A stretch of DNA of 64,000 nt, from contig CM119376.1 in assembly GCA_051294905.1 (NCBI GenBank), forward strand, positions 29,264,001 to 29,328,000, in the 5' to 3' direction. The notes beneath the pieces are model-generated. The model was not told the origin of the DNA, made no database searches, and saw only the letters and a program-made list of their open reading frames with translations. Position 1 is the stretch's first letter; the number at the start of each line of letters is the position of its first letter. Position numbers and translations under genes: made by a program. Shown here piece by piece: positions 12,245 to 45,100 of the stretch. The stretch is from Botryllus schlosseri (taxonomy: Eukaryota).

Positions 12245-21157
<8,913 letters not shown>

Positions 21158-22066: not shown

Positions 22067-23807
22067 GCGCGTCGTCTTGAAGTAGGTTAGCATACGTCCG
22101 CTTTCTTCAATAAGTGCACTAGGAGGATGCCTGAATGTCTTCTTTTTAGGGAATTTGTATTAAAATGCCATCAACAACTCGACCATTTTCTTTTCCGCCA
22201 TTACAGATTTCAGAGTTTTCAAAAAGTGGCCTCTTTTTTCGATATCAAATATGGTAACACTGCTTGAAGTGCATGCTTGGCACGCTGTGACACTTTAGTC
22301 CTGTGCAAAAAGCGCTAAAACTGTAATTCTCGTCGATAATATAACTCTACATGCTCGATTCAGTTTTGATACTCGAATTATTGTGCCCAGCCCTGGTTGT
22401 TACTTGGCTACTCTGTAATGACGTGGCGTGGCAATGTTGGCGGCATAGCATTTTGAACGGTTTTGTCGCGTTTGTCCAATCATTTTATGTTCAATTCCAC
22501 AAGTTTCTTGAGGCATATCATCCAGGATACCTTCAATCGTGAGACGGACTACTTTTTGAAATGCGCAATTTTCCGCGATTATTTGGCGTTTTAATTCGCC
22601 GCGGGATTTAATTTTGAGCTTTCTTGCTGCGTGTGTTTCTCTCTGTTGGCTTGGAGTAGCATGTTTTTTATGGAATAAACCCAAAGCGAAGTGCCCTCAT
22701 AACGAGGTCGGTTGGTAATTGTATTGCGATAGCTTTGGTACGGGTGACATGCAGATTGCAGTGGTATTCAGCACTGCATGTCACGAGCACGTTCGCCTGG
22801 CAGGAGGTCGCCAGAGAATTCGGTTTTTCGAAAGCTAGTCTTCCAGTGGTCCTCTGGGCCAGTCTCAATGCTAATTTTCCTGACTTTTTACACAGTTTCT
22901 AGTACTATTTTACAGTAATGATAGACCAAACACCAATATTGTGGTAGCTTATGCTATCCTTTGAAGTTACAACAAAATGCCTGTCTTGGCCGAGTATCGA
23001 TTTAAATGACTTGGTCGACTCATAATCAATCGATGACTGGAGTCAAGTCAAGAAAAAAATTAGTTACCGTAGGTACTTTCTTGCGCTTTCACCAAGACTT
23101 TTATGCAACATGTGTTTACTTCCAAAAAAATACTGTACCCTTAAAAGTGGTTTTCTGACAGATTGCCCTATCTTCTTGATCGTTATTGCAAATATTGTTC
23201 GAAATTCTCTGTAACATATTGGCCATTTTAGATGCAAAAATCTGTCGCAATTTTCGAAATTGGCAAATCTATTGGTTGGATCAGTTGGATCGAGCATCTT
23301 GACGGTTGCATATAACTTCCTGTGAACGATTTCGTGAACTCGTTAAAAATGATCATTTCTTGACAGCAAAAGTGAAGTAAACCCTGAAGAATTCACGGAC
23401 TGAATCTGAAGAATAAATTCGATTTATTGTTTTTGTGTCTGTTCTTGTAACTTTTGCTCGCAACTACCACAGGAATGTAAAACATCGTCAAACTCAAACG
23501 TAACAATTTTACTTTCGCAAGTGTCGGCGATACCAGAGGCGTGAATAAGTCATACAGAATGTGTTGAGACATTACAACCCTGCTGGAACCATGCCTGCTG
23601 TTGCTGTCTGACATAGAATGCAAAATAGTATTGCATGTTTATTTGGAGTTCAAGAGTATGAACAGGATTGCATGTTTAGATTTGTAAACTAGAATTACTC
23701 GATAAGAAAAAAGCAATTGCATATAATCATAATACTCGTCAGATATATTTTAATCCGCCCATTACACAATGCGATGTAATTTGCCACGGAATAATATTAT
23801 CAAGGCA

Positions 23808-24757
23808 TTACAGTCCAGACTTGATTTTGAAACCCTGACCATACAGTTCTATCTCAACCTGACATGCAACTAGCGAATTTCTTTTAACGTGAAACTTGTA
23901 AACATTTGACTCCTGTTCCGTTTGCCAGACGCAGGTCTCAATCACGTTGCTCATCAAGAGTTCGCTGATGTAAAGCAAAGACATTCTCCGAATTTTATGA
24001 TCCAATAAGGAACCTTTTTTTCCGAACGTCGTAGCAGCAAATGCGTCACCCAAGCAGTCGTAACAAAGATTTGCGTAAACCGCCTGATTAACATGATTGT
24101 TACGATCGGTTTGTGATGCACTGATTTTGCAGACGCTAGTAAAAATTCTGCCGTCATATGGCAGACACGGATATTCTTTCTGGCATTGAGGAGCACTTCG
24201 CTGTATTTTATAACGCTGTGCACATCTCTCAGGTGTGAAATATCTAGTCAATGACTGTGAAAAAGCAGTCGGGCGTCTAGTTGCGGGATCGATATTCACT
24301 CTCAAAACTGAGGACAGTAGTAGCACATCTTTGGTATTGTGATCCACGACAGTATCTTCTAAGAATTGAGACGATTTTCCGATTGGTAAAAGTTGATGAT
24401 GTAATGTGATTTTTCGATTTATGAAATCTATGTAAGAGCCACCCTCTTGGGAATCGGTGGTTTTATAATAAAATTGCGGCAGGATTTCGATTTGTTGCCA
24501 CTTTATAAAAAACATGTTCTGATAACTCTCTTCGGCTTTGTCGGCGATATCTTGCGTGAGTTTGGCAGCCGACGCTCGAGCGCTTTCACACATCTTCAAG
24601 ATTGAGTGTGGCGATGTTTGCCCTGCCAAAATACACTCTTCAGCTCGTTTCTTCGAGATTATATTGATTGGCGGAACTTACCTCCGCCGATGATACTTCC
24701 GTAGTTCAAATGTTGCATTGTGATTTCACAATGAGCATCTCCGTATTGTATTTCCAT
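23808..24757 (-). CDS. Acyl-ACP/acyl-CoA thioesterase-like double-hotdog protein, paralog 1. Exons 24757-24682 and 24622-23808, 296 aa
   Basis: SQTDRNNHVNQAVY resembles the FatA/FatB-type DxNxHVNN motif, followed by Y-x-x-E. 59-bp phase-1 GT-AG intron after codon 25. C-terminus KIKSGL. Confidence 0.8.
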
Positions 24758-25101
24758 GACGCTTTATAAGTTTCAGGGCTAGCATGAACAAGAGCCCTTT
24801 GGTTAATAAATTATATTTTCTAAGAAATTATTTTCTGTTGGTAAATCATCACAATTTACAAATAAATCAAAAACAATATGAAACTTGAAATAATCTGGTT
24901 GGACGGGGACGTAGCTTACACATCATAATTCATAACCTTCGGAATATCATAAATTTTGTAATACAATTGACATTACAAATGTAATTTGTGGATATTTTAC
25001 TTCATTCCATTTTCATTTAAATACAATACCGGTACTCACAAACCAAATTGTAGGGAATCCATACAGAAGGGCATTCCATCTATTACAAATTGGTACAAAG
25101 A

Positions 25102-25477
25102 TAGGGTTACCATATTTTGGAAATCTGGACACTTCCAAAAATTTTCAAATATACAATACTGGAGTAAAATCGTAAAAAATGGATAATTTTTCCCGACTTT
25201 GTGGCTGGTTGACTAAAAAAAGGTAATTTTTCAGACTCGGCTCCAGAAATTCACACTTTCACTAAAAAAAAAGGTCAAGTTGCATGCTCAGCTCCCAAAA
25301 TAGCGGCCGCAGCGTTACTTCAATGCTGATTTAATGTATATCAGTCGAATTTTACCCTATATTTAACCAAAATTTTCAAAAAAGCGGACAAAATCCCCAA
25401 AAAAAGGACAGTTGGACGTCCTCCGAGGACACTTTCAAAAGAGTCAAAAAAGGGGACGTATGGTAGGCCTAACCCTA
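25102..25477. mobile_element. MITE family E (TIR TAGGGTTACCAT) with a 6-bp insertion in the right TIR
   Basis: Flanks TACAAAGA / TACAAAGG (7/8). Fragments of the same end occur at 7781-7792 and 17848-17859. Confidence 0.75.
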
Positions 25478-25951
25478 TACAAAGGTGACCCAGTATATCA
25501 TTCAATATAAATTGCAGTAAATTGCCAATTGAAAACTCTCAAAAAAAAGCATAGAAATTATGATTGCTCCATACCTCATCACAACAAAGTATTAATGTGA
25601 CATAAAGAATCAAAATGAACATTGATGGGGTTCTACAATAATAAGGCACATAATTATGAAAAAAAAACTAGTGATAATAGGAGAACACATTATCTATGCG
25701 GCATAGTCAAATCACATACAGAATATATTCAAAGAGGCAAAAATGAAATGTTATAGAGTACAGTACACACATGAAACAAATTAGGGACCGATAGATAAAC
25801 CTTCCTCGCCCACTAGTAGGCCTATAGATCTTATGAATAATATATTCACACATAATATATTCGCACAAATTGACATACAGTTGGCCGACATGATTAATTG
25901 GCAAGTTTCGCTATGTTGCATGAGTTACAAATGCGATTTCATGGAATTCTC

Positions 25952-26876
25952 TCATGGAAATAGCTCAATTTCCACCTGACACACGATGACCGAGCCCTTT
26001 TTCACATTAAACTTGTAGACTAATGGGTTTGCATCATCTTGCCAAACAAAAGTATTAATTTTATCTCTGTAAACGACCTCATTCAGAAATAGAAATGACA
26101 TTCTGGAAATTTCATGGTCAAGAATTGAACTAGTTTTGCCAAATGCAGATTTAGCGAACGCTTCCCCTAAACAGCTGTAGCAAACATCAAGAAAAGAAGC
26201 TTGATTCGCATGATTATTTGCGTCGAGTTGGCGGATATTTATTTGACATTCATTCATGAACATTTTATCTTCACTGGGTTGACATGGAAACAAACATTGA
26301 CCAGCGAGTCTCATTTCTTGCGGAATTTTTATGTGCTTTACACATTTTTGAGCTGTGTAGTGGTCTTTGAAGGACAGTGGAAATGGTTTTGGGCGTCTGG
26401 TAGTCGGGTCAACATTGACATTTAGAAGTGTTGCGATAAATAATGGGGATTCATTTTCAAGGTCAAAAGCAGTCACTTCTCGTAATTGAGATGAATTCCT
26501 GATAGGTGAACAGCATACACACAGTTTAATCTGCCTATTTACCAAATCTATGTAAGAATGTAGACTGGAGGGGTCAATCTTTTTGTAAAATTCTGGCAAA
26601 ATTTGAATTTGCTGCCACTTCAAAAAAATTGTTCTGCTGGCTTCATCTCCGTGTACCGGTAGAGTTCTGTCGATACGATATATAGAAGCATTGCCAAATT
26701 CAACGAACTTGAGGATCGAACGAGGAGATATCTGTTCTGAAATGTCACGTAATTTCTAATGAAAACGACTGATGAAAATAAAAAATACACCAAATCTCAC
26801 TTCCTCCGATGATATCTCCGTAATGAAAATGCTTTATCGTGACTTCACAATGTGTGTCCCCTGTTTTCACTTCCAT
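25952..26876 (-). CDS. Thioesterase-like paralog 2. Exons 26876-26801 and 26736-25952, 286 aa to the UGA stop
   Basis: RQLDANNHANQASF motif and the same phase-1 intron (64 bp). Roughly 70% amino-acid identity to paralog 3 by eye. Confidence 0.8.
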
Positions 26877-29205
26877 GGCACCAGATTGTAGATCAGTTCT
26901 GCGTAATAGAGTAAATGAGTTTGCACTAGCAATCGTAATTCTTACCCCGGTAGACCCAGAATTGCACAAAATGGTCAACATTTGACTGTTTCTGATTGAA
27001 GTTCATGTGAAAATACTGTTGGTACTCTATGTCAGCGCTATACCATTGAAATTGTAGAAGTATGTTTGAAATTAAAAAAACTATTTCCACTTGACCTGTG
27101 TTGCTGTAGCACTGCAAGTTCTTGCACGAGATAAGTAGTTTATGATACTATGATGTAGTTTGTTAGTTGATGGTTTCTGGCAAACTTATATGCCTGGTAG
27201 GCATAAACTAATATTTATTTTTAACTTGTAGTACGGAAGAAGGTTCCAGTTGGTGCCTGAGCTTTGTGCGAAGTATTATATATATATAAGAATGATATAA
27301 ATTAAAAAGATATAAACTCATCTATCGAGTATACGCATTATTATAGAGCCAACAGTGTGAAGCTGGAATTTATAGGACTGCTGCAGTGTTTTTCTGCTAG
27401 GTTCAATCAGCTCGGAAGCAGATGTCGAACCTATGGTATAGAAATGAGTAGATTTGGTGTGAGTTGACGGTTGATTGCAACGTAACACATAAGTAATGTT
27501 TTTTGGTGCATGCATTGGCAGATAAATGCATTTCTCACGCTCTATCTTACTCTAGCAGCCATTGAAACGCATTCTATATCTTAATGCCTATAACAGCAGG
27601 AATTCACCGAAAATGAAGTACTTACATCTTCTAGTTTTCCTATGAAAACTTTCAGCCAGTTTGACCAATTCCTACTACATCAAAAGTCAGACTTGAAGCA
27701 ATAATAATGTAGGCCTATCGGTCATTATAACATGATTCTGAAGCAACAAGAATTCAAAAATCATAAATATGGCACACATAAACATTGAACTTCTATCAAC
27801 AGCGATAAATCAGGAATGAAGATGTTGGCAACAATTATTTCGTCTAAAAGTCAATGTGACACAACTCACAAGGCTTCTTTATGTTATGTGCAAAACCACA
27901 TATATCATATAGGTTGCAGTAACCAAGCCAGCAATGCACATGAAATGGAATGTACTCAACGCGCATCTCAGATGAACATTATAAATGATTGCAGAAATGT
28001 ATTTGCTACTTTTATCTCATTAGTGTTGCATGCACATTGTACAATGTACATGCCCCCTTGAGATAATAATTTACATTGTCTTAAAAAGAATTTGCTGGCG
28101 AATCATCACAATTTATAAACATATCAAACTTGAAATATAATCTGGTTGTACATACAGAGGACTACATCCTTATAATTTGTAATCCAATAACTTTGGTCAA
28201 GATGGCCAATTGGTAATAATTCTAATATTACAAAAGTAAGTTGCGTATATTTCACTACATTCCATTTCCATTTATATACAATTCCCACAAAACAAATAAT
28301 ATTGAATAAATCAATCAGGGCGAAAAGCATTGATTTCGTTTAATAGCAAATTAGTTTAAAGGTAACGCAGTACAGCATTCAAAATAAAGAGAAGTATGTT
28401 TTCAAAAAAATAGCACAAAGATAGCAGATTGCCTAACACTTCATAACAACAAAGTGATTAATATTACTGTAGTCAAAATGAAGATTAATTGGGTTATCCT
28501 AAAGACCACTGTAAAGTCGACTCAATCTAAACCAACACGGACAGTAAGTTGATAATAATGTGGTCACTATATAGACTGGGGACATCAGACTTGGACAAAC
28601 CATTCATTTAGTTAGTTGACAGTCAACTAACCAACAGCTTTTTGAGTAGTTCAAGTTGTGGATATTGAAATTTCAGTAGTTCTAGTTTCACATTTGATAA
28701 AAATATCAGTTGCCAAACAGCTAGAAAACATGTGTCGTCGTTTTATGTGAATCGAGATTCCGTTGAATGTTTGTGCTCTGCGCAGCCATCGCTAGCTTAT
28801 AGCCATCGCTACTAAAAGTGGCGTAGCCAGAGGGTGGGTATTTGGGGTCGATATCTCTCCCATTTCAAACAGATAACACTGTCCTTTGAAATGTAGACTA
28901 TACGTCTGATATTTCGAATAAAATAATAATAATGTGTTGCCTCGGAGAATGAAATCCAGTTCAGTACGGGTCTAACATTTATTGGCTGAAGGTAGTTAGT
29001 TCTAGTTCTGGCTCTAGATGTGGCTTTTGAAAAATGAGTAGTTCTAGTTGCAGATTTTTAAAACTGAGCAGTTCTAGTTTCAGTTCCACTTGCCGTTTTG
29101 AAAATCCCATAGTTTGTACAAGTCTGGGGGACATATCAATATCACTACAGTATTGAAAAATCAATTGAAGAATATACTCAAAGGAACGAGATTGATAGTT
29201 TACAG

Positions 29206-29819
29206 CATTGGTTCTCAAACTGAGGGAGGCCTTGGGGGCGTGAAAGCATCTGAGGGGAGGCGCGAAGCTGCCTGAGAAAAATGATGTTTCTTGAACTAGG
29301 AATAAGTTTAATTTGTGCCGAAACATACAATTTTCAACAATGGCAATAATCCTGATTATATTTCGATTTTAAATGTTATGAATTGGTCGTACCATCCACA
29401 CACTGATGTTAGATTTTGACTGATACTGAACCTTGCGGTAATCAGAAGATGTCCGTGAATGAAGTATAACTGATCACGTACGTTTGAGGCGTTGAGCTAA
29501 GCTCAAGTGGGGGGATAGATTGAATTAGGCACCAAAATAGTTAAAATATCTATGTACCACGTGCTATCATTGCACATGATTCAATATTCAACTAGGAATT
29601 TTTTCGCGCACTGCAGGATTTGAATCTGGCTCATAATTATTGCTGTGTTTAGTCCGAATATACCATTTTTGAGAATTGTCTTAACAGCCATAACACCGTC
29701 CATGCCACGAAGCAATGCAATGGTTCCTCTTTTTAATATTTTATGATATGACGATAAGGGGGCGTGACATTTTTCACTAACATCAAGGGGGTGTGTCGAA
29801 AAATGTTTGAGAACCACTG
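29206..29819. mobile_element. Buster-type hAT MITE (family A variant)
   Basis: CATTGGTTCTCAAAC...GTTTGAGAACCACTG with perfect TSD GTTTACAG. Confidence 0.88.
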
Positions 29820-29955
29820 GTTTACAGGGTAAAGTACACACATGACAGTGATTAAGAACCGAGAGATAAAATTTCAATACCCACTATCATAAATTTTCTG
29901 GCGGAAATTGACACGCAGTACACAATTTCTTAAAACATTGCTCTTCTTGACTGTG

Positions 29956-30911
29956 TTACAAATGCGATTTCCTGGAATTCTCCTGTGCAAATAGCTCAAT
30001 TTCAACCTGACACACGATCACCGAGCCTTTTTTGACATGAAACTTATAAATCAATGGATTCGCACCATCCTGCCAGACAAAGGTAATAATTTTGTCCATG
30101 TAGTTTGCCTCGTTGAGATAAAGAAATGACATTCTGGAAATTTCATGATGAAAAATCAAACCGGTTTTGCCAAATGCTGAGTTAGCAAACGCTTCACCTA
30201 AACAGTTGTAGCAAATTTCAGCATAAGCAGCTTGATTTGCATGATTATTTACGTCAATTTGACGGATATTTATTTGATATTCATTCACAAATATTCCATC
30301 TTCATTGGGTGGACATGCAAACAACGATTGCCCACGCAATTTCATTTCCTGGGATAATTTTATGCGTTTCTGACATTTTTCAGCTGTGTAGTGGTCTTTC
30401 AAGGACTGAGGAAATGGTTTCGGTCGTCTGGTAGTTGTGTCAACATTGACCGACAGAGCGGTTGCGATGAATAATGGAGATTCACTTTTAAGATCAAAAA
30501 CCATCACTTCACGCATTTGAGACGAATTCCTAATTGGCAGACTGCATACACGCACCTTCATTTGCCTATTCACCAAATCTATATAAGAAGGTGGACTAGA
30601 GGGTTCAATCTTATTTTTGTAAAATTCCGGCAAAATTTGAATTTGCTGCCACTTGAGAAAAACTGATCTGATGGCTTCATCTCCGTATACCGGAAGAGTT
30701 CTGTTGATCAGATGTACAGCAGAGTTGCCAACTTCAATCGCCTTGAGGATGGAATATGGAGATATCTGTTCTGAAATCGTAATTTCTTATGAAAACTGTG
30801 CAACTTATGAATATCAAAAATACACTGAACCTTACTTCCTCCGATGATATCTCCGTAATGAAAATGCTTTATTGTGACTTCAACATGCGTGTCCCCTACT
30901 TTCACTTCCAT
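29956..30911 (-). CDS. Thioesterase-like paralog 3. Exons 30911-30836 and 30770-29956, 296 aa
   Basis: RQIDVNNHANQAAY motif and the same phase-1 intron (65 bp). C-terminus ENSRKSHL is a PTS1-class signal. Confidence 0.82.
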
Positions 30912-33900
30912 GGCACGAAATTGTCAATCAGTTCTGCATGCAATAATCGTCATTCCCAACCTAATTGACTCGGAACTACACACACATTTTACCATTTCTG
31001 AATAAAGTTTGACACCAAGTTATGTAAGATGTCGTTAGTACCCTAGATCACGGTTTTTCAAACGGCCTCAACTTCAGATAGCTTGCAAGGGTATACATTG
31101 ATGGGCCATCACCACAGTGGTTAAGACATAAATTAAAAACTCAACATCATAGTCTGTAAAAGTTAGTAGTTTCGTATATGATCCTTGCAGTTTTGCTATT
31201 ATGCTGCATGTGTGGTTTGTCGGTATCTGATTTGTACGAAGCTTACATGCATTGCAGCGAGTTGAGTACATGACGTCATTGTCAGATCTGGAAACCTCAT
31301 GCCAAACATGACCAACATTTACTGGTACTCAGTCGGCGAGTTATTCTACGTCACTGCATGAGGACCTTCATTCTTCACATAAGCACAAAATTTCAATACA
31401 AGCATGGGAAATATTCTTCATAAAAATCTTTTTTGTGAATAGGTCCTCTTTGAAAACTAGATGATCTCTGTCCGATGCTTTGTCTTACAATAGCAATTGG
31501 CAGGGTTGACCGAGCAAAGACTCGATTCACGATTTTTTAGCGAATCGAGTCGTTTTTTTCAAATCCGTTAAGTGACTCGAGACTAGGACAGCCTGGACAG
31601 ACATTTCATTGTAACTTTGAAGAATAGTAAAATCACCACTTGGAAAATAGGACCAGTAACTGTTAGGACTGAGGAAAATTACGATATTATGAATGAAAGC
31701 CATTCTATATCAGTTGAGCAGAGTCGAAAAAAAGTTTGTCTAAACCAGTGGTTCCCAACCTTTTTCGACCCATCGCCCCCTTTTCAAGGTTATCACCGAT
31801 CATCGCCCCCCAAATTTTGTGTACCGAAAATTGGGCATACAAACTGTAATCACCGGCGGGTTGACTAAAATAAAAAAAAAAGGTCAAATTTTCGGCTCTA
31901 TGTCTAATCATCATTGGTTTATTATCAATTTTATCAGTTCAATACACCACAAAAAATGCGATACGAAGAAAAGAAAGGAAGATGTCGAAGTGACTAGGAG
32001 TTGTCTATGGAACCGGACACCCACCTTGGCCTAGGCGATGTAAAGAGGAGGCATGCACACTGAATGAAAGTAAAGAAGATAGTATAGAAAAAGGAAGCGA
32101 CAAGAAATAGGGCGGCATGTCATGGGAAGCGAGATCGATTTGTCAGTCGTGGTCCGGTAATCTTGAGGATGAACTGTATTTATTTAGTAGTAATTGCTTG
32201 TATTTCGACTTGAATGTGGACATGTTCGTCGACTGCCGGATGTTCAAATTGGCATTGTTCTAAACAATCGCAGCGACGCAGCACAATGACCATAACAATG
32301 GCCCTTGCGTGGTTGCGATTGTTCAGAACAATGCCGATTTTCAGACTTTGAGGTGTATTTCAAGGGGGTTCCATTGCCCCAATTAGATTTTATTGTATAT
32401 TTTCGGAATCAGTGCGACAGTAGCTTTCAAATAAGATCAACTTCATTGAATTTAAGCACGTGGGTCGTCAGCTATGGGACTAGCAATTATGTTGAGTTCA
32501 GATTGCTGAGCAGTAATTCCCTCCGGGCAAGCAAGCGTGACGACGGGTGTTGCGTATCTATCCGTAGGTTAGTTATCTATAGTATATTCAACCTATTGAC
32601 TGCACACTAAACATACATAATCCACTAGCTGTAAAACAACTGTTTCTGATCTGTAAAACATGGAGAGTGCTCCAGTTCCAGTGGATGGATGAGATGCTTT
32701 CTGCATGCCCATTATTTGAAAGAAATGTAGGATAGGGCATATGTACCACCTCAGCTAAAAAAACACCTATTGCATGTCTGTCTAATTACACGGTCAAGTT
32801 TAAACTTGAATTCATAGGACCGCTGTAGCGTTTTTCTGCTAGGTTTGATCAGTGTGGAAGCAGATGTTGAAGCGATGGCGTAGCAATGGCTGCCCACTGA
32901 CTCCAGCAAATTGGGTATGAATGAAATGACATGTAGCGCAATTTTAACGTCACCAGAAAGCGATTAAGCACCACCGCTGTAAATGCTCATTGCTCAATCT
33001 TAGTCTTGCTTGCATTGAAACTTCCTTAATCTCTATCCAGAAAGCAAAGTACTTACATCTTCCGCTTTTCCTACAACACCTTCCCGGCAGTTCGGCCAAT
33101 TCCTAACTACAATAATATGAGAGTCAGTTTCAGACAAAATGTAATTAAAGAGATGATTCTAAAACAAAGATTTTATACAATTTATGATAAATACCATGGC
33201 ACACATAAATACAGAACTTCAAGCAAAAGCAAAAATATGTCGACCAATTTGATTTTGGCAACAAACATACTGTACAAAAGCAAATGCTTCAAGATTTTAG
33301 GCGCCAAAGACAATGGAATACAGCGTACAGCAGCCAAAATTGAATTCATAGAGTGCGCAAAGTAAAATGTACTATAGAGGCGTCACATGAGAGCAGCAAT
33401 ATGGCAGCGATGTATTTGTTACTATATATTTGGCGTGGGGCCTATAATTCAATACAAGCTGCCTCAATTTACTGGAATAGGCAAGCCACCCGTGTTCAAA
33501 ACCAACTTCCATAGCTAGTTGTACTGTCACGCTTATGATGGCAAAATGTCTTTCCTATAATCAATGTCAGTTCGAAAAACATTCATGTTATCATAATCTA
33601 AATTAGGATTTGATTTTTTCCTAGGGTTTATCTATGTAGACTAACCTGTAACATAGAATTCCTCCGGCGCAATAATTAAATAATACTATCGATAAACATA
33701 AAGTAAATAGGTAAATTACATATGACCATGTCAAACATAACTAAGTTATTAAAATTCCAGACAGGGAACATGTAGATATATTGTACAATGTAGTTGACAT
33801 TTCTATAAACAGTCTTGAGGTCACTTCTTGAAATATATGAAAGCTATTCTATGCCAGGAACATGCGACCGTTGCACACAACACCGTTTAGTGACCCCAAC

Positions 33901-34832: not shown

Positions 34833-37800
34833 TCAATGTAAGCTCCCGGGCCACGACACAACTTTTAAAGTAATACACGTGACGCTACGTATCATATGTA
34901 ACACTTGCGCGTGATTCATCTCGCGCACCGGTCTTTTATTGATCGCCACTATTTCGTCCCCGCATTTTAATACTTTGCTGGCAGGTGAGTTTTTCGAGAT
35001 ATGGGTTATGAAAATCGGGATTGGCGTCGTAGCGTCTACGATACCTTCCGAGATTTTAAAGCCGTAACTCGTACCGCTCTGCCGCTTCAACACGAGCTCT
35101 TTCATCGACGAGAAATCTCTAGACGCGGCCAACCACATTTTCCAAGAAGGCGCCCAAGTGCTGGGATTCTGATGCAGCGACGTTAGCTCGTCCCACAAGG
35201 CTTCGTCTTCCGCTTTTCCATCATATTCAAGCTCGTACACGACTAGCACCACTTCTCTTTGCTGCGCGCACTCGCGCAGGACGCCCATCGCTTGATTATG
35301 CGATAACCCGGTGAGTTTGATAGAGTTAATTTCGGACAACAAGTCTCCACGTTTGATTCGTTTGTCTTTTCCCAATACTGAAAAAGGCAGTACGTTTTGT
35401 ACGAAAATCGGCAGGTTACCGTGCGGGCTGCAGTTTCCTCCCGAAACCACAATACCAAGATTATCACGCGGAGATTTAACCACAGAAATCATTTTTTTAG
35501 TACGTTTGGACTTTGATATTTTCGGTTTCACCACATATGTATCTGATCGGTTCAATTTCGCTTTCCGTGATTTTTCTTCCTCCACCGATTCATTAAACAT
35601 AATCACGGCGGAACTCGTAGTTAGATGACGCACATGGATTTTTACTTCCTTATCGCAACTGCCTATAACGCGAGCAGCGTGTTCAGGCGTGCTGTCCGTT
35701 AAATCGGTGTCGCCGATTCGCAAAATTCGATCTCCGACTTGTAATCGGCCGTCTGTTTTCGCAACTTGATCAGGAATCAGTTCGATGATATAAACGCCTT
35801 TATCGCCAATTTCGCTCGATGATATCCGAATGCCGAGTTGCTCCAAAGGTGGCTTTACCAAGCACACAGTCTCCTCGTGAGCACTTTTGCTTTTACATTT
35901 GTTCTGCGGCTCCGTGATCTCATTAGAGTCATCGTTATTGTGGATATCACGCAGTAAATGAAACTTCATCAAAGACGAGGGCTTCATGAGGATCGATCTC
36001 GCTTCTGCGTGAGTCACAGAAAACATAGACTCTCCGTTAACTTCCACAAAGATATCACCGACGTGAAGACGACCGTCGTCAGCCACCAAACTACCAGGAA
36101 TGATTTCCTGCACCATCACATATTGAACAGGAGTGTCATTACCACCCACAATCATAATCCCGAGTTCGGCAGTGCCTTCGGGCCGGAATAAATCAACAGT
36201 TATGTCTTCAGAGAATGGATGCAAATCCGATAACTTGTCCGTTAAATCTTTAAACCGACAATTTTCAATGTGAGACTTCATTTGAGATCTAGGACAGCGG
36301 TGGAGGCACCCGTGCATCGATTTCGGACATCTGATCACAACGCCCGGGCAGTTGTCCTGTAAATGGTCTTTTAACTCGCAGCGGGGCAGTGTTTTCTGGC
36401 ACACCGTATCATAAGGACAAGTGACACTCAATTTATTGACGAGTTTCCTCAAAATCAGACTAGATTGCCAACAGTCCGAGTTTGAATTCGTCAACTTAAC
36501 GCGATCGACCGGGCATATGTCTCTTACTTTCAGATAATTCATTAAACATATGTTGCAAAAAGTGTGACCGCACGCAGTATCGTAGGGGTCGACGAGAGGC
36601 TGCAGGCAGATATCGCACATTAAGTCTTCGTCGACTTCATCAACGTAATCGTACTCGTGATTTTCCGTGACGCCATGATTCTGACCGCAGATTTTACATA
36701 AAGGTGGCAGTTTGGGAGTAGCGGCTTGAGACACAGGAGTAGATGGAGTATCACTTCCCAAATCACGACTTGAACTACGACTAGAACGGCTGGATGTATT
36801 AACATGTGAGTTCTGTGTAGCTGTCGGTGAATTGAGTGCCTCCAAATCTCTGCTGGACCTACGGCTAGATGTATTAACAGGCGGGTTCTGTGTAGCTGTC
36901 GGTGAATTAAGCGCCTCCAAATCTCTGCTGGACCTTCGACCAGAACGGTTAGACGTAGAAACAGGTGTGTTGTGTGTGGATGTCGGTGAATTAACTGCTT
37001 CCAAATCTCTTGACCTTCGATTAGACGTTTGATCCTCCTGATTCGCCGATATTGAGTCGAGATCTTGGCTGTGCCTTCGACTTGATGCTGGCCTGTTATG
37101 ATAAACAACATCGCCCGAACGTGGAGACATCCTGTACGCAGGTGGAGCGACGTATGGCAGTCTGCGTGTGGAAGCACCCGTCTGTTGCGATGATCTTGGG
37201 GTCTGTTGATTTTGTGCGTCAGCAGTAGCATTTGGACTTATTCTAGTTTGCTGTATCGGTGAATTACGCAAGTTCTGAGTATTTACAGCAGATCTGCTGG
37301 AATAGCAAGGCTGTTCGCCACCACCGACTGATACAATTCTATAGTTGGATTGCGATAAAACAGGGTCTTGCGATGTGCTCGGTAAATCCCCGTAACTGCC
37401 CCGTCGGATATTGGTTGTCGTGCGTTGCCCGTCTAATTTAACGTAACGTGGCTGATGACCGACCGGCGATACATACTGAGGAACGTCATTACTATCCAAG
37501 TGAGAAAAATAATTGAACCCTGTATCGTCGTAGGTGTATGATTCGTTCTTTGTGATAGTTTGGTATCCAAAGTTATCGATTCCTGCCGCAGACGGGTTAG
37601 CGATCATTGTCGGAAGTGAATCAGGCCTTGCCATGAGTTTTTTCTTGCTTTTCCCCGCATGCTTTTTCTGCGGGGTGCGGCTAACCGCCACAAAAGCTAT
37701 ATCCCCCGTATCGCTCTTTATCGCTACTACGTCGCTGTTTACGCGACCGCGATCTTTGGACTTCATAATCGGAGCATCGTTACTGCGATCGTCATCCCAA

Positions 37801-37874
37801 ACGTCGACGCTACTTTCGGGCAGGAAGTCTATGAGGTCCCGGTGACAATTATCGTCGTTATAATTATACTCCAT
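34833..37874 (-). CDS. LNX1/2: LNX1/2-like E3 ligase (RING, TRAF-type Zn fingers, 4 PDZ), single ORF of about 1013 aa
   Basis: CGQNH..TENHEYDYVDEVDEDLMCDICLQPLVDPYDTACGHTFC matches the LNX1/2 RING region. WAPSWKMWL lies between PDZ3 and PDZ4, and the C-terminus is VSWPGSLH. First ATG at 37874. Confidence 0.9.
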   Translation of the reverse strand: MEYNYNDDNCHRDLIDFLPESSVDVWDDDRSNDAPIMKSKDRGRVNSDVVAIKSDTGDIAFVAVSRTPQKKHAGKSKKKLMARPDSLPTMIANPSAAGIDNFGYQTITKNESYTYDDTGFNYFSHLDSNDVPQYVSPVGHQPRYVKLDGQRTTTNIRRGSYGDLPSTSQDPVLSQSNYRIVSVGGGEQPCYSSRSAVNTQNLRNSPIQQTRISPNATADAQNQQTPRSSQQTGASTRRLPYVAPPAYRMSPRSGDVVYHNRPASSRRHSQDLDSISANQEDQTSNRRSRDLEAVNSPTSTHNTPVSTSNRSGRRSSRDLEALNSPTATQNPPVNTSSRRSSRDLEALNSPTATQNSHVNTSSRSSRSSSRDLGSDTPSTPVSQAATPKLPPLCKICGQNHGVTENHEYDYVDEVDEDLMCDICLQPLVDPYDTACGHTFCNICLMNYLKVRDICPVDRVKLTNSNSDCWQSSLILRKLVNKLSVTCPYDTVCQKTLPRCELKDHLQDNCPGVVIRCPKSMHGCLHRCPRSQMKSHIENCRFKDLTDKLSDLHPFSEDITVDLFRPEGTAELGIMIVGGNDTPVQYVMVQEIIPGSLVADDGRLHVGDIFVEVNGESMFSVTHAEARSILMKPSSLMKFHLLRDIHNNDDSNEITEPQNKCKSKSAHEETVCLVKPPLEQLGIRISSSEIGDKGVYIIELIPDQVAKTDGRLQVGDRILRIGDTDLTDSTPEHAARVIGSCDKEVKIHVRHLTTSSAVIMFNESVEEEKSRKAKLNRSDTYVVKPKISKSKRTKKMISVVKSPRDNLGIVVSGGNCSPHGNLPIFVQNVLPFSVLGKDKRIKRGDLLSEINSIKLTGLSHNQAMGVLRECAQQREVVLVVYELEYDGKAEDEALWDELTSLHQNPSTWAPSWKMWLAASRDFSSMKELVLKRQSGTSYGFKISEGIVDATTPIPIFITHISKNSPASKVLKCGDEIVAINKRPVREMNHAQVLHMIRSVTCITLKVVSWPGSLH

Positions 37875-38005
37875 ACCTTCTGAAATCACAAATTTGAAGC
37901 ATGGTTTGCGTGAGTCGAAATTGAAATTTCCGCTCGTGTCACGAAATTGGAGTAAAAATGCAATTTTAATGTATCAAGCAACAAAACGCACGAGAGGATT
38001 ATCGT

Positions 38006-39156: not shown

Positions 39157-40539
39157 TTATTCAACTTTCTTTTCCAATTTTTGACTACTCTTCATAGCAT
39201 AACGAACTTGCAGCAAAAGCCACATAACAATGTAAAACAAGTGGCCATAGTAAAACATCTTCATATAGATGGGTGCGTATAAACGCCATTTCCTAAGAGA
39301 AAAATCTAGCAGACAGTACCCGAACAGCAATCGAACGTAGACAAAGCCACACAGATGACCAATCCACGACGTAGATTTTGATGAAAATATACTTTGCACA
39401 AGCTTTGTTTTTCCGAGTTCCTCACGAAGTGGACGTTCCACAGTCATGACCAGAAATTCGTACGCAAAACATGTGAAATAACCTTCATGATAGCCGTGCC
39501 AGAGTGCTAAAAACATCAACGTTGTTATATGAGACACTTTGCGGTTACCAAGAAAACGCAAACGTTTGAAAACGTAACGAGCGACCCACTGATTAGTATT
39601 AATGTTAAACGCTTCAATCAGATGTTGAAAGCTGTTGCAAAATATGTATTTCCTCAGTTTAACATTTCTCACGGCATCCCACTTATTTTTGCCATCTTGC
39701 TTGTAATAACCAAGGCCTGATAATATACAGACTCCTTCGTTAATCATCCATATCGCGACGTACTGCGACAAAAGAATGTGACCTCGCAAACACACTACTC
39801 CGGCTATGTTTAAAAATCCAGAATCTAGGAATCCAGGTTCAAGAAGCGTGCTTTGTGGCATTGCTGCGTCACAAATCAACTGTAGAACGAGGACAAATGT
39901 CCCAGAAAGACAGCGACGAAACGCCGGGACTACAGATCGAGGTCGCTTTCCAGGGTTATCGGATAATTCTCCGGAAACCATTTGGCGAAATCTTCGAATT
40001 GGAAACTGTGGGCCGACGTTAAAACCTCCGTAATAGTAACAAAATCCAAACATTTCCAGTAAACCCGGAATATCGTTTATAAGCAAAGTCTTTTGCTCGG
40101 CAGAGACACCTTTTTCGTCACGATGTCCGTCGTAAATATCCCAACAGAGTCCAATCAATCTCAAAGTTAGTATGCAATGAGCCATAGTCCAATTGACATC
40201 ATAATCTTGAGTGGCCGAAGAGACATACCCAAGAGTGAGGTAAGTCAACTGAAACGCAAACGAAACTCCGACACATAGAGCTCCTGTTCCTACAATTTTA
40301 AACAACAGCCATTGAGTCGTAATGCATATCGCCGAGTGTATAATCCCGTTCCCGTACAACCAGTGAATCAATAGCGCTCCGATTGCGGTAAAAAACGCAT
40401 TCTGGATTCGAGGATCTTTGGCGAAGAGAAATCTTCGGTGGATAGTCCCAAAAATATATCCCAGGTACACGGTGAGTAGTAATTTGACGGCGTTCACAGG
40501 AACGCCGAATTGATCAGCATAATCGGTGACGAAAGACAT
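39157..40539 (-). CDS. LPCAT3: Lysophospholipid acyltransferase 5 / LPCAT3 (MBOAT), single exon, 460 aa
   Basis: FNINTNQWVARYVFKRLRFLGN and LALWHG with the catalytic His, multiple hydrophobic helices, and a C-terminal KKVE ER-retrieval motif. Confidence 0.94.
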   Translation of the reverse strand: MSFVTDYADQFGVPVNAVKLLLTVYLGYIFGTIHRRFLFAKDPRIQNAFFTAIGALLIHWLYGNGIIHSAICITTQWLLFKIVGTGALCVGVSFAFQLTYLTLGYVSSATQDYDVNWTMAHCILTLRLIGLCWDIYDGHRDEKGVSAEQKTLLINDIPGLLEMFGFCYYYGGFNVGPQFPIRRFRQMVSGELSDNPGKRPRSVVPAFRRCLSGTFVLVLQLICDAAMPQSTLLEPGFLDSGFLNIAGVVCLRGHILLSQYVAIWMINEGVCILSGLGYYKQDGKNKWDAVRNVKLRKYIFCNSFQHLIEAFNINTNQWVARYVFKRLRFLGNRKVSHITTLMFLALWHGYHEGYFTCFAYEFLVMTVERPLREELGKTKLVQSIFSSKSTSWIGHLCGFVYVRLLFGYCLLDFSLRKWRLYAPIYMKMFYYGHLFYIVMWLLLQVRYAMKSSQKLEKKVE

Positions 40540-40631
40540 CGTTTTCACGTTAAATGCAACGAAAATCTAGCGACCTTGAAACGAAGCAAATTTGAACGTT
40601 AGTAATGCCATTGTGTCTGGACAAAAGACAG

Positions 40632-41165: not shown

Positions 41166-42136
41166 CAAGACAGTGTGACCAGACACATTTGCCGGATTAC
41201 AGCATAATGAGAGCGATATGATTCCTTGAGAATCTATTATTTGGTGAAATGATTTTATGTTTAAATTTTATTTCGAATTTCAAGTCAGATGTACAGACAT
41301 TTCACACTCTCACGCTTATGAGGATGAACTCTGATTTCATATGAAATTAACTCGATTATTGTGATATTCTTTTTAATTCGGAATTTCAATAATTCACATG
41401 TTTTTAAATTCAATAATTCTAATTTGATTTGAAAAAACTTGGTTTAACGCTAACTTCGAATTCAAGAACTTCATTCGAGGTTTCGGCGTTTCGCAGAACC
41501 ACAACTTCTTCAGGTGTTAGTTAGCCTATGGTCCAATTGCACCAAAGAAAGGCAAACAATATGTCAGTTGCCATCATGTAAATAATACAAACTGGACTAC
41601 ATTGTGTTTTCACAAGTAAAAAGTCACGAGGGATAGCAAGTATACTAACTATCTGCCCTGGTAATTCTCAACTTGAATTAGAATCAGTTAAATTCTAAAT
41701 TTTCCCAGGCAGTAAGCACTATAGCAAAGGCTCACGTCAAGTCACAGTGATAAACTGATATAATCTGACTGATATAAACTGATATAAATTATTATATCAC
41801 ATCACACACAAGTCCACCACTCCAGACTCCACAATCCACATATATTGTAACAGTTAAAACCAGTATGGTATTAAGCATGAAAATAAAACCAAGTTTTTTA
41901 CAAAATAAGAATATGGGATTCTGGATCCGAACCCAATCTCAAGTTAAAATAACTATAGGCCTATAGGCTAATACACTAATTTCTTGATGGAGATTATCAT
42001 AAAAACTAGACATATACACGTTGAATGAAAAATTAACGAAATAATGGAACTGAAGTGGTAGGTTTCAGTACGAGGGAAACTGACCTGCAAACACTTGGGT
42101 ATTCTTGATAAACCGACTCGACTCATCACAAAGAAG

Positions 42137-45100
42137 CTACAGGGTTGGTTCGATTGGTTTGAAATAAGGACAAATATGTTAGAAATGAGGTGAGTCTCAT
42201 GTCAGAAATGAGGATAGTCATGTCAGAAATGAGGATAGTCATGTCAGAAATAAGGATAGTCGCTATATTCACTATAAAGTCAGTTACAGTACCAGGCACG
42301 ACTTTCTAGTGCTGCTAACCCAGTCCGAACACATCCCAGACATGATGTCCAAACACGCCCCAGACACGATGTCCGGGTATCAACACAGGCCGAACACGCC
42401 CAAGACACCATGTCCGAATGGCAACACAGGCCGAAAACACCCCAGACATGATGTCTGAACACGCCCCAGATACGATGTCCGGGTATCAACACGGGCCGAA
42501 CACGCCCAAAAGACACCATGTCCGAATGGCAACACGGACCGAACACGCCCCAGACACGATGTCCGAGTGTCAACTCAGATCCGAAAACAACCCAGACACC
42601 ATGCTTGAATGGCCGAACATGTCCCAGACACGATGTCCGATTGGCAGCACAGGCCGAACACACCACAGACATGATGTCCAAACACGCCCCAGATACGATG
42701 TCCGGGTATCAACACAGGCCGAACACGCCCTAGACATCATGTGTGAATGGCAGTACAGGCCGAACACCCCCTCCCCCCCAGACATGATGTCCGAACACGC
42801 CCCAGATACGTTGTCCGGGTATCAACACGGCCGAACACACCCAAGACACCATGTCCGAATGGCAGCACAGGCCGAACACACCCCAGACATAATGTGTGAA
42901 TGGCATCATAGGCCGCAGACACAATGTCCGAACACAGCCGAGACACCATGTTTGAATGGCCGAACATGCCCCAGACACGATGTCCGATTGGCAGCACAGG
43001 CCGAACACACCCCAGACATGATGTCCAAACACGCCCCAGATACGATGCCCGGGTATCAACACAGGCCGAACACGCCCAAGACACCATGTCCGAATGGCAA
43101 CACAGGCCGATAACACCCCAGACATGATGTCCAAATACGCCCCAGATACGAAGTCCGGGTATCAACACGGGCCGAACACGCCCAAGACACCATGTCCGAA
43201 TGGCAACACAGGCCGAACACACCCCAGACACGATGTCCAAGTATCAACACAGGCCGAACACGCCCAAGACACCATGTCCGAATGGCAACACGGACCGAAC
43301 ACGCCCCAGACACGATGTCCGAGTGTCAACGTCAACTCAGATCCGAAAACAACCCAGACACCATGCTTGAATGGCCGAGCATGCCCCAGACACGATGTCC
43401 GATTGGCAGCACAGGCCGAACACAACCCATACATGGTGTCGGAACGCCCCAGACACGATGTGCTATTGGCAACACAGTCCCAACACCCCCCAGACACGAT
43501 GTTAATAAGGTTGGTCGTGTTTGAAATAAGGTCAGTCTAGTGTTTGAAATAAGGATAGTCATGTTAGAAATAAGGATAGCCATGTTTGATATAGGGATAG
43601 TCATGTTTGAAATAAGGATAGTCTCATGTTTGGAATGAGGATAGTCATGTCAGAAATGAGGATAGTCATGTCAGAAATAAGGATAGTCGCTATATTCACT
43701 ATAAAGTCAGTTACAGTACCAGGCACGACTTTCTAGTGCTGCTAACCCAGTCCGAACACATCCCAGACATGATGTCCGAACACGCCCCAGATACGATGTC
43801 CGGGTATCAATACAGGCCGAACACGCCCGAGACATGATGTCCGAATGGCATCACAGGCCGAACACACCCCAGACATAATGTGTGAATGGCATCATAGGCC
43901 GACCACATCCCAGACATGATGTCCGAAGTCGCCGCAGACACAATGTCCGAACACAGCCGAGACACCATGTTTGAATGGCCGAACATGCCCCAGACACGAT
44001 GTCCGATTGGCAGCACAGGCCGAACACACCCCAGACATGATGTCCGAACTCGCCGCAGACACGATGTCTGAGTGTCAACTCAGGCCGACACGCCCCAGAT
44101 ATAATGTCTGAATGGCATCATAGGCCGAACACGCCCCAATAACTTCGCTATCTCGTGTCGCAAATTTATAAGGTTGAACTTACTTAATACAGCCATAATG
44201 CACATTTTACCTCATTTTGACGTGTCGCAAGCAATAAAGCACAAGTATGTTTTGGAATGTAATCAAATGTATTGCAAACAAGAATATTCATGAATGCTAG
44301 CTAGGAGAAATCTCAAGATCATGCGTTGTCATGCAAATATTTGTGTAGTCCAGTGGTTCCCAACGTGGGCGATATCGCCCCCCGGGGGGCGATTTGTCGG
44401 TCCAGGGGGGCGAAAATAGCCAAGGGGGCGATAGGGGGGCGAAAACGGACGAAGGGGGCGATAGGGGGCGATGGCGCGTTGAAATGGCTATATTGGCGTC
44501 CATGACCGTAACTGCCACACTCAAACCCCAATTGGGATGGGGGCCCGAGATCGAAGGAGGCCCACAATTCTTTCGTGAATTAACAATAATTATTGTGGAA
44601 ATTTAGGCAACTTTTTCAAAAAAATTCCGCGCTGCGCGCCTTTTCTTGGTCTCATATTTCTTACTTATTGGATACCCTTCCTCCAAGAAATAATATGCAT
44701 GAGTTATATAAATGGGCATCTCGGCATCAGTCACACCATGTCGCACCAAGAGATATGTATAGTCTCAGGCCATGTAACATGCGACTCCGAGAAGTGGGCC
44801 AGAACGCGAAAACCTTAGGGAAAAGGCCTGCCTTTATGCTGACCGACTTCGATATATATACGATAGACATATATATTTAATTGTATATATGCGCCTAAAT
44901 GGCTGGCGCCAAATGTTCCTGTCCTGGCAATCAGAACCCCACAAAATTATGCCATCTCGCAGAGAAAAATTAATTGCCTGTGCAGACATACCAATTTCAA
45001 CTCGTGTGAATCTTTTAGTTTAGTACGTATGGGCGATTTGAATATCTTTTGGCATAGCAGACAGGCCACAAAATGTCATTACGTAACGAAGTCATTATAC

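What the first reader, a model, noticed from the sequence alone, without database searches (positions are those of the whole stretch)
25925..25960. Intact peroxisomal-type tail hidden in frame behind a UGA stop in thioesterase paralog 2
Seen in sequence: paralog 2 ends ...ELFP-UGA, but the frame continues GAG AAT TCC ATG AAA TCG CAT TTG TAA (ENSMKSHL*). That is 26/27 nt identical to the true C-terminus of paralog 3 (ENSRKSHL*). Similarity collapses right after the TAA, and the UGA differs from paralog 3's CAG at all three positions. Established: (S/A/C)(K/R/H)(L/M) is the PTS1 consensus, and UGA readthrough exposes cryptic PTS1 tails in e.g. mammalian LDHB and MDH1. Inference: either programmed readthrough gives dual cytosol/peroxisome isoforms, or a duplicate was recently relocalised by a nonsense change. 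The UGA-G context is not the classic leaky UGA-CUA, which argues for caution.
Basis: partly seen in the sequence, partly recalled or inferred. Interest (0 to 1): 0.8.

Follow-up and report, generated by a model that had tools for sequence, protein, structure and literature searches.

The report
Stop codon cuts off peroxisomal tail
One of three neighbouring sea-squirt thioesterase genes has a real UGA stop nine codons before an intact peroxisome-address tail; this is most likely a young nonsense change that strips the address, and regulated read-through of the stop remains untested.

Summary
On the minus strand, paralog 2 ends TTT CCA TGA. The frame then runs GAG AAT TCC ATG AAA TCG CAT TTG TAA (ENSMKSHL*), 26/27 nt identical to the true end of paralog 3 (ENSRKSHL*). 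The next 27 nt are only 15/26 identical.

The genes are two-exon, ascidian acyl-ACP-thioesterase-like double-hotdog proteins. A C-terminal PTS1 is the family norm: 66 of 150 relatives end in [SAC][KRH][LM].

Paralog 2 is otherwise intact. dN/dS against paralog 3 is 0.27, it shows no rate acceleration, its catalytic motif is kept, and the stop removes only a disordered tail.

Nothing specific supports programmed readthrough:
- The context is UGA-GAG, not UGA-CUA.
- There is no downstream RNA structure.
- There is no SECIS element.
- The 24-nt tail is too short to show constraint. It only rejects a stop as old as the duplication (P≈0.01).

CAG→TGA is three transitions, so a sense path Q→R(CGA)→stop is available; one relative reads CCA CGA at this site. 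Other family members have also lost their PTS1 (masked SRL, truncation, FKL).

Best reading (about 0.6): a young nonsense truncation has removed the PTS1 from this duplicate. Functional readthrough is about 0.2. No same-species or sister-species data exist in the databases to settle it.

The parts
26801..26876 (-). Paralog 2 exon 1 (ATG at 26876-26874; 25 codons plus 1 nt; donor GTGAGA)
   Evidence: regex and translation (MEVKTGDTHCEVTIKHFHYGDIIGG); 92% identical to paralog 3 exon 1
26737..26800 (-). Paralog 2 intron (64 nt, GT...TTTCAG)
   Evidence: 52 matches, 8 mismatches and 2 indels against the paralog 3 intron
25955..26736 (-). Paralog 2 exon 2 coding part up to ...VEIELFP (260 full codons)
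   Evidence: dN/dS 0.27 against paralog 3; catalytic D-x-N-N-H-x-N-Q motif kept
25952..25954 (-). In-frame UGA stop of paralog 2 (context CCA UGA GAG); the homologous codon is CAG in paralogs 1 and 3
25928..25951 (-). Eight in-frame sense codons behind the stop, ENSMKSHL, ending in the PTS1-type tripeptide SHL
   Evidence: 23/24 nt identical to paralog 3
25925..25927 (-). UAA, the ancestral stop shared with paralog 3
29956..30770 (-). Paralog 3 exon 2 with stop; ends ...ELFAQENSRKSHL*
   Evidence: AF2 model pLDDT 89.8; Foldseek matches to acyl-ACP thioesterases
30836..30911 (-). Paralog 3 exon 1
23808..24622 (-). Paralog 1 exon 2 with stop; ends ...ELYGQGFKIKSGL* (SGL, not a canonical PTS1)
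24682..24757 (-). Paralog 1 exon 1

Best explanation
Paralog 2 is a lineage-specific tandem duplicate of a peroxisomal (PTS1-bearing) acyl-ACP-thioesterase-like double-hotdog enzyme of an ascidian. A relatively young nonsense change created a UGA at the start of the flexible C-terminal linker. Because the stop lies in the last exon, the mRNA should escape nonsense-mediated decay. It should yield a fully folded enzyme that ends ...ELFP and lacks the SHL address. That enzyme would be cytosolic unless it is carried into peroxisomes as a hetero-oligomer with paralog 3.

The eight codons behind the stop are a relic of the ancestral C-terminus that has not yet decayed. They are not demonstrably a selected readthrough extension. 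Whether the allele is fixed, polymorphic, adaptive (a new cytosolic isoform) or the first step of gene loss cannot be told from one haplotype.

Shown here: gene structure, intactness, family PTS1 habit, fold, stop context. Inferred: localisation, recency, route of the mutation.
For: (1) The stop and the tail are real.

(2) PTS1 is the ancestral family state. The top relatives end SRL, SRL, SKL, AKI, SNL, SKL, AKL and SHM. 66/150 representatives (24/36 at E<1e-10) end in [SAC][KRH][LM], against about 0.2% by chance.

(3) Paralog 2 is otherwise intact. It has its ATG, GT-AG intron and open frame. dN/dS is 0.27 with dS 0.55. Tajima-type relative-rate tests are not significant with six outgroups (12 v 14, 19 v 11, 14 v 10...). 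The D-x-N-N-H-x-N-Q motif is kept.

(4) In the AF2 model of paralog 3 (pLDDT 89.8), the last strand is residues 250-259 and residues 264-270 are disordered. The stop corresponds to position 262, so it removes only the tail.

(5) The tail's similarity rejects only an old stop. P(one change or fewer) is 0.010 if the tail had been neutral for the whole paralog 2 branch. It rises to 0.16 at half the branch and 0.51 at a quarter.

(6) All three CAG/TGA differences are transitions. This allows CAG→CGG→CGA→TGA with sense intermediates and a final CpG C→T step. Relative P0005 reads TTT CCA CGA at the homologous codons. Pro at position -1 is the commonest state in relatives. Paralogs 2 and 3 have lower CpG o/e (0.77) than their neighbours.

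(7) PTS1 inactivation recurs in the family. P0007 has SRL masked by a 3-codon extension (TTA CAG AAT TGT TAA). P0008 has a genuine stop right after ...ISLF. The Styela clava paralogs differ, SKL versus FKL versus AKI. Paralog 1 ends SGL.

(8) TGA is an ordinary stop here: the neighbouring PDZ-RING ORF ends in TGA.
Against: The stop codon differs from paralogs 1 and 3 at all three positions, and the preceding codon differs as well. If the first hit had been CAG→TAG, two further changes in the stop with one change or fewer in the 24-nt tail would argue for a constrained tail. The CGA intermediate is inferred, not observed in this lineage. The tail has no synonymous change, and its only replacement (R/M at position -5) spares the K-S-H-L core. 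That is what selection on a translated extension would also give. Some readthrough of any UGA is physically expected, so a minor peroxisomal isoform may exist regardless.
Confidence: 0.6

Rival explanations
1. Programmed (selected) UGA readthrough. A fraction of ribosomes would insert Trp, Arg or Cys at the UGA and make ...ELFP-X-ENSMKSHL. The gene would then yield a major cytosolic and a minor peroxisomal isoform, as with mammalian LDHBx and MDH1x and the fungal and insect cases.
For: UGA is the leakiest stop codon. The extension is short, in frame, free of stops and ends in a canonical SHL preceded by Lys. The tail is 26/27 identical to paralog 3 while the UTR beyond the TAA is 15/26. Three changes in the stop codon against one or fewer in the tail would fit TAG→TGA tuning. 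There are precedents where some orthologs carry the PTS1 inside the ORF and others behind a stop (PMC4207609). Only 1 of 42 ribosome-profiling readthrough genes had the UGA CUA motif, so other contexts can work (PMC4359377).
Against: The context is UGA GAG, not UGA CU(A)(G). The +4 purine is the base preferred at eukaryotic stops. There is no stable or unusual structure downstream (z = +0.71 and -0.04). The tail is not more conserved than the CDS at silent sites. The 64-nt intron is 87% identical, so non-coding similarity between these duplicates exists without translation. The conservation comes from a paralog comparison only, and it is compatible with a stop present for up to about half of the branch.
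Confidence: 0.2
2. Incipient pseudogene or segregating null allele. The truncation would be the first disabling lesion of a redundant tandem copy, or a nonsense allele present only in the sequenced haplotype, with no new function.
For: Three paralogs sit in 7 kb, so redundancy is likely. No AATAAA or ATTAAA occurs within 525 nt downstream of paralog 2, whereas paralogs 1 and 3 have them at 54/165 and 219 nt. The paralog 2 branch is somewhat longer, 0.23 against 0.14. From general knowledge rather than a test here, ascidians are highly heterozygous.
Against: There is no other lesion. dN/dS is 0.27 and relative-rate tests are not significant. The lesion spares the whole fold. AATATA variant hexamers are present in the 3' region.
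Confidence: 0.1
3. Sequence or assembly artefact. The true codon would be a sense codon such as CGA, and the TGA a base-call or polishing error.
For: If the true codon is CGA, a single C/T miscall would be enough. No read-level data are available here.
Against: The site is not in a homopolymer. The surrounding sequence is clean and has no N. Substitution errors are rare in polished assemblies.
Confidence: 0.05
4. Ectopic gene conversion from paralog 3 keeps the 3' end, including the tail, similar. The tail's identity would then say nothing about its age or its translation.
For: Exon 1, the intron and about 25 nt upstream are 88-92% identical, against 81% for exon 2 and 72% at third positions. 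This suggests at least one past conversion patch. The last 84 nt have 10 differences, P=0.052.
Against: There is no significant run-length signal (P=0.48). There is no silent-site heterogeneity (max-chi2 P=0.43; last 30 codons against the rest, Fisher P=0.33). A conversion tract would have to stop exactly 3' of the TGA or predate it.
Confidence: 0.05

Closest known systems
LDHBx and MDH1x (mammals); Art1, Rpe1 and PGK (fungi); IDH (Drosophila): cryptic PTS1 exposed by UGA readthrough (PMC4359377, PMC5133446, PMC4207609)
   Same: A UGA is followed by a short in-frame extension that ends in a canonical PTS1. Relatives carry the PTS1 inside the normal ORF. The enzymes are oligomeric, so piggy-back co-import is conceivable.
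   Different: Those cases have UGA CU(A)(G) and extensions conserved across species, with measured readthrough (1.6% to about 4%). Here the context is UGA GAG, no ortholog data exist, and nothing has been measured.
Type-I ACOT gene cluster of mammals (ACOT1 cytosolic, ACOT2 mitochondrial, ACOT3-6 peroxisomal; Hunt et al. 2006 as cited in PMC8919083)
   Same: Tandemly duplicated thioesterases whose copies differ in compartment through gain or loss of terminal targeting signals.
   Different: ACOT1-6 are alpha/beta-hydrolases, not hotdog proteins. Their signal differences are established and old, not a stop in front of an intact tail.
Acyl-ACP thioesterases FatA and FatB and bacterial TE14 enzymes (PDB 5X04, 2ESS, 2OWN)
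   Same: Double-hotdog fold (Foldseek E about 1e-13, TM about 0.65). The D-x-N-x-H-x-N motif region is conserved.
   Different: Sequence identity is only 12-16%. The animal proteins carry a PTS1 instead of a plastid transit peptide, so the substrate is presumably acyl-CoA rather than acyl-ACP (inference).
Styela clava tandem family (LOC120339910/11/13/14, LOC144427293)
   Same: The closest named relatives, also ascidian. They are multi-copy, and their C-termini vary in PTS1 quality: SKL, FKL, AKI.
   Different: They are only 33-36% identical to paralogs 2 and 3. None is known to have a stop in front of the tail.

Membership tests
Acyl-ACP thioesterase-like double hotdog (Pfam PF01643/PF20791, clan HotDog) | Two tandem hotdog domains (double-hotdog fold) | tested here: met
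   AF2 model of paralog 3 exon 2 has pLDDT 89.8 and pTM 0.88. The top PDB matches are 2ESS, 5X04 and 2OWN at E about 1e-13, TM 0.63-0.67. FatB proteins top the Swiss-Prot models.
Acyl-ACP thioesterase-like double hotdog (Pfam PF01643/PF20791, clan HotDog) | Pfam Acyl-ACP_TE_C hit above the gathering score | tested here: inconclusive
   Paralog 1 scores 21.1 bits against a cutoff of 21. Paralog 2 scores 18.7 and paralog 3 scores 19.6, both below it. PDB sequence-profile search found no hit. ESM Atlas neighbours carry PF13279/PF20791.
Acyl-ACP thioesterase-like double hotdog (Pfam PF01643/PF20791, clan HotDog) | Conserved Asp/Asn/His active-site motif in the second hotdog domain, and thioesterase activity | tested here: inconclusive
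   D172, N174, N175, H176, N178 and Q179 are invariant in the three paralogs. D172 and H176 are at least 90% conserved in 30 family members. The catalytic role is assigned from general knowledge of FatA/FatB. Activity was not tested.
PTS1-targeted peroxisomal matrix proteins | Extreme C-terminal tripeptide [SAC][KRH][LM] | tested here: not met
   As terminated at the UGA, paralog 2 ends LFP. The feature is met by paralog 3 (SHL) and by the paralog 2 tail only if the stop is read through. Paralog 1 ends SGL, which is non-canonical.
PTS1-targeted peroxisomal matrix proteins | PEX5 binding and peroxisomal import | not testable with these tools
   Needs localisation or binding experiments.
Functional translational readthrough genes (LDHB/MDH1 type) | Leaky stop-codon context UGA CU(A)(G) | tested here: not met
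   The context is CCA UGA GAG AAU. The motif is defined in PMC4207609 and PMC4359377.
Functional translational readthrough genes (LDHB/MDH1 type) | Protein-coding constraint on the extension across species | tested here: inconclusive
   Only a paralog comparison is possible. The tail is 26/27 identical, which rejects neutrality only if the stop is about as old as the duplication (P=0.01). It does not reject a stop present for half the branch or less. No ortholog is in the databases.
Functional translational readthrough genes (LDHB/MDH1 type) | Stimulatory downstream RNA structure (alternative to the motif) | tested here: not met
   100 nt from the stop folds at -15.1 kcal/mol, z=+0.71. The 91-nt window around the stop gives z=-0.04.
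Functional translational readthrough genes (LDHB/MDH1 type) | Measured readthrough product | not testable with these tools
   Needs a reporter assay, Ribo-seq or mass spectrometry.
Selenoprotein (UGA = Sec) | SECIS element in the 3' UTR | tested here: not met
   Rfam scan of 22500-31500 at E up to 10 found no SECIS.
Processed or decaying pseudogene | Multiple disabling lesions, or relaxed dN/dS | tested here: not met
   There is a single stop. The intron and splice sites are retained. dN/dS is 0.27. Relative-rate tests are not significant.

The most novel reading that the evidence does not exclude
This could be a snapshot of the birth of a readthrough gene in a tunicate. A nonsense UGA placed in front of an ancestral PTS1, in a non-canonical UGA-GAG context, would be kept because low-level readthrough (possibly amplified by piggy-back import of oligomers) splits one thioesterase between cytosol and peroxisome.
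Probability: 0.15. Interest if true: 0.65.

Novelty: new member of a known kind. Interest (0 to 1): 0.35.

Why it matters
If the stop is a plain young truncation, the locus is an ordinary but clean example of how tandem duplicates change compartment by losing a three-residue address. Small C-terminal changes that remove a PTS1 also appear in other members of this uncharacterised animal peroxisomal thioesterase family. If readthrough were shown, it would extend PTS1-exposing readthrough to tunicates and to a non-UGA-CUA context. It would also show the evolutionary route: a stop inserted ahead of an existing signal, rather than a signal evolving in a UTR. Either way, the family (an acyl-ACP-thioesterase fold with a PTS1 in molluscs and ascidians) has no described function and deserves a biochemical look.

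Tried and rejected
(1) Frameshift in paralog 2 at the T7 run near 26630. I suspected this at first, but three-frame translation shows the frame is continuous and matches paralogs 1 and 3.

(2) Selenocysteine. No SECIS element was found.

(3) Templated multi-nucleotide mutation. TTCCATGA occurs twice, 13 nt apart, in paralog 2 only, and the four clustered changes make the upstream copy identical to the downstream one. The Monte-Carlo probability is only about 0.04. Pro (CCA) is probably ancestral, which removes one of the four changes. I treat this as coincidence.

(4) Gene conversion of the tail. Neither the run-length test nor the silent-site heterogeneity test gave a signal.

(5) A mini-intron that skips the stop (CAG|GTGGAA...GAGAG|AA, 27 nt). 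It is too short and would delete the conserved last strand, so I rejected it by inspection.

(6) A-to-I editing of UGA to UGG. Only an 8-bp hairpin lies just upstream and the z-score is about 0. There is no long duplex.

(7) Finding orthologs or same-species transcripts. The word-indexed search with paralog 3 gave nothing. The family-profile search gave only Ciona proteins. The exhaustive HMMER search gave relatives at 52% identity or less. LPCAT3 shows that the nearest sequenced relatives are 76% (Logan) and 63% (Styela) identical.

(8) DNA behind the stop of the similarly truncated relative P0008. It could not be retrieved because the sample file is too large.

Full report
**Observation.**
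The feature lies on the minus strand. Window 25960-25925 reads TTT CCA TGA GAG AAT TCC ATG AAA TCG CAT TTG TAA. The homologous end of paralog 3 (29991-29956) reads TTT GCA CAG GAG AAT TCC AGG AAA TCG CAT TTG TAA. After the paralog 2 stop, 26 of 27 nt are identical. TGA and CAG differ at all three positions, and the codon before them also differs. In the 27 nt after the shared TAA, identity drops to 15 of 26 aligned nt.

**Anatomy.**
Three paralogs lie head to tail on the minus strand. Each has a 76-nt exon 1 (MEV/IK...IIGG, phase-1 GT donor), a short intron (64 nt in paralog 2, 65 nt in paralog 3) and one long exon 2.
- Paralog 1: 24757-24682 and 24622-23808, ending KSGL.
- Paralog 2: 26876-26801 and 26736-25952.
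- Paralog 3: 30911-30836 and 30770-29956, ending KSHL.

tblastn finds no further copy in the window. Paralogs 2 and 3 are 73% identical in protein and 81% in DNA. Paralog 1 is about 42% identical to both. In a maximum-likelihood tree, paralogs 2 and 3 are sisters (99/98 support), with branches of 0.23 and 0.14.

**Host.**
The neighbouring single-exon LPCAT3/MBOAT5 gene (39160-40548) is 63% identical to the Styela clava protein. It is about 50% identical to the Ciona, Phallusia and Clavelina proteins and 76% identical to one anonymous Logan transcript. The window is therefore from an ascidian whose own proteins, and those of any close relative, are absent from the searchable collections.

**Family.**
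- Pfam gives only borderline Acyl-ACP_TE_C hits, and the PDB sequence search finds nothing.
- An exhaustive profile search finds 284 relatives.
- The ESM Atlas places the protein among mollusc-rich 4HBT_2/Acyl-ACP_TE_C clusters.
- An AlphaFold model of paralog 3 (pLDDT 89.8) matches the acyl-ACP thioesterases 2ESS, 5X04 (FatB) and 2OWN at E about 1e-13 and TM about 0.65.
- The D-x-N-N-H-x-N-Q motif is invariant in all three paralogs.

A C-terminal PTS1 is the family habit. 66 of 150 representatives, and 24 of the 36 best, end in [SAC][KRH][LM], against about 0.2% expected by chance. The tail behind the paralog 2 stop is therefore the ancestral peroxisomal address, not a chance motif.

**Is paralog 2 alive?**
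Apart from the UGA it has no lesion. Against paralog 3, dN/dS is 0.27 with dS 0.55. Tajima-type relative-rate tests with six outgroups are all non-significant. Both paralogs break a similar number of family-conserved columns (10 and 8, six of them shared). In the model the last beta-strand is residues 250-259, the stop corresponds to residue 262, and residues 264-270 are disordered. The stop therefore removes the address and nothing else. Because it lies in the last exon, nonsense-mediated decay is not expected (general knowledge).

**Does the tail show constraint?**
It behaves like coding sequence rather than like the UTR, but weakly.
- 4% of 27-nt CDS windows are equally similar.
- The permutation test gives P=0.024.
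- At silent sites the tail is indistinguishable from the CDS.
- If the tail had been neutral for the whole paralog 2 branch, 6.6 changes would be expected, and P(one or fewer) is 0.010.
- That probability is 0.16 for half the branch and 0.51 for a quarter.

The data reject only an old stop. In addition, the untranslated 64-nt intron is 87% identical and exon 1 is 92% identical. Non-coding similarity between these duplicates therefore exists, perhaps from an older conversion patch. No significant conversion signal is found in exon 2.

**The three-position difference.**
All three CAG/TGA differences are transitions. A route through sense codons, CAG (Q) to CGG (R) to CGA (R) to TGA, ends in a CpG C-to-T step.
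- The linker position is variable in the family: Q, N, R, E, T.
- Pro at the preceding position is the commonest state in relatives.
- Relative P0005's transcript reads TTT CCA CGA at exactly these codons.
- Paralogs 2 and 3 have lower CpG o/e (0.77) than neighbouring genes (1.2-1.3).

The triple difference therefore does not require an old stop. This route is inferred, not shown.

**Readthrough signals.**
The context is CCA UGA GAG. The motif that drives PTS1-exposing readthrough in fungi and animals is UGA CU(A)(G) (PMC4207609, PMC4359377, PMC12233894). A +4 purine is the base preferred at eukaryotic stops (PMC9272376). RNA folding downstream of the stop is unremarkable (z=+0.71 and -0.04). 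No SECIS element is present. TGA also terminates the neighbouring PDZ-RING ORF. Other contexts can support readthrough, and basal leakage of UGA is never zero, so a trace of extended protein is likely. Nothing here indicates that it is selected.

**Family precedent for losing the address.**
- P0007 ends TCA CGA TTA CAG AAT TGT TAA. This is an SRL buried by three residues, with CAG one transition from TAG.
- P0008 has a genuine stop directly after ...ISLF, one residue before the end of paralog 2.
- The Styela paralogs carry SKL, FKL or AKI.
- The Ciona members have no tail.
- Paralog 1 ends SGL.

Change of PTS1 status among duplicates is thus recurrent, as in the mammalian ACOT cluster.

**Verdict.**
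The most likely explanation (about 0.6) is a relatively young nonsense truncation that removes the PTS1 from an otherwise functional duplicate, with the post-stop codons as an undecayed relic. Selected readthrough is about 0.2. The remaining probability is shared by early pseudogenisation or a null allele, an assembly error, and conversion. The decisive data are outside these tools: reads, other individuals and species, a reporter assay, localisation and mass spectrometry.

Noticed in passing
window 26737-26900 vs 30771-30935 (minus strand): Exon 1 (92%), the 64-nt intron (87%, two small indels) and about 25 nt upstream of the ATG are more alike between paralogs 2 and 3 than exon 2 is (81%; third positions 72%). 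This could be an older 5' gene-conversion patch or a constrained first intron or promoter.
   Followed up: partly
L004:1290-1330 (Logan SRR23343704, protein P0007): This relative ends ...N S R L Q N C*. The DNA is TCA CGA TTA CAG AAT TGT TAA, so a canonical SRL is masked by a 3-codon extension. CAG is one transition from TAG, which suggests a stop-loss that inactivates the PTS1.
   Followed up: partly
P0008 (Logan SRR25569784, 4366-nt contig, gene 1149-1922): This relative terminates right after ...CQAEISLF, almost exactly where paralog 2 stops. Its DNA could not be fetched, so it is unknown whether a hidden tail follows.
   Followed up: partly
window 25955-25975 and 25935-25947 (minus strand): TTCCATGA occurs twice, 13 nt apart, in paralog 2 only. 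GUGGAAAU and AUUUCCAU can form an 8-bp hairpin ending at the U of the UGA, and this hairpin is imperfect in paralog 3. Both are probably coincidental (Monte-Carlo P about 0.04; fold z about 0).
   Followed up: yes
window 25400-25924 (minus strand): No AATAAA or ATTAAA occurs within 525 nt downstream of paralog 2; only AATATA variants are present. Paralogs 1 and 3 have canonical hexamers at 54/165 and 219 nt.
   Followed up: partly
window 23808-23822: Paralog 1 ends KSGL, which is not a canonical PTS1. The trio may therefore already differ three ways in targeting: SHL, none, SGL.
   Followed up: no
window 34833-37889 and 39157-40548 (minus strand): A 1018-aa RING plus multi-PDZ (LNX-like) ORF and a 463-aa LPCAT3/MBOAT5 ORF are each uninterrupted single ORFs, which is unusual compactness for such genes. 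Both have CpG o/e of 1.26-1.32, against 0.77 in paralogs 2 and 3.
   Followed up: no
window 42001-48000: There are strong opposite AT-skew and GC-skew blocks (AT skew +0.32 at 42-44 kb, -0.35 at 46-48 kb) with GC above 50%.
   Followed up: no
window 17195-17549: Overlapping ORFs on both strands have low-complexity PNPNIP / GDIRVG-like repeats. This is probably a simple or tandem repeat rather than a gene.
   Followed up: no
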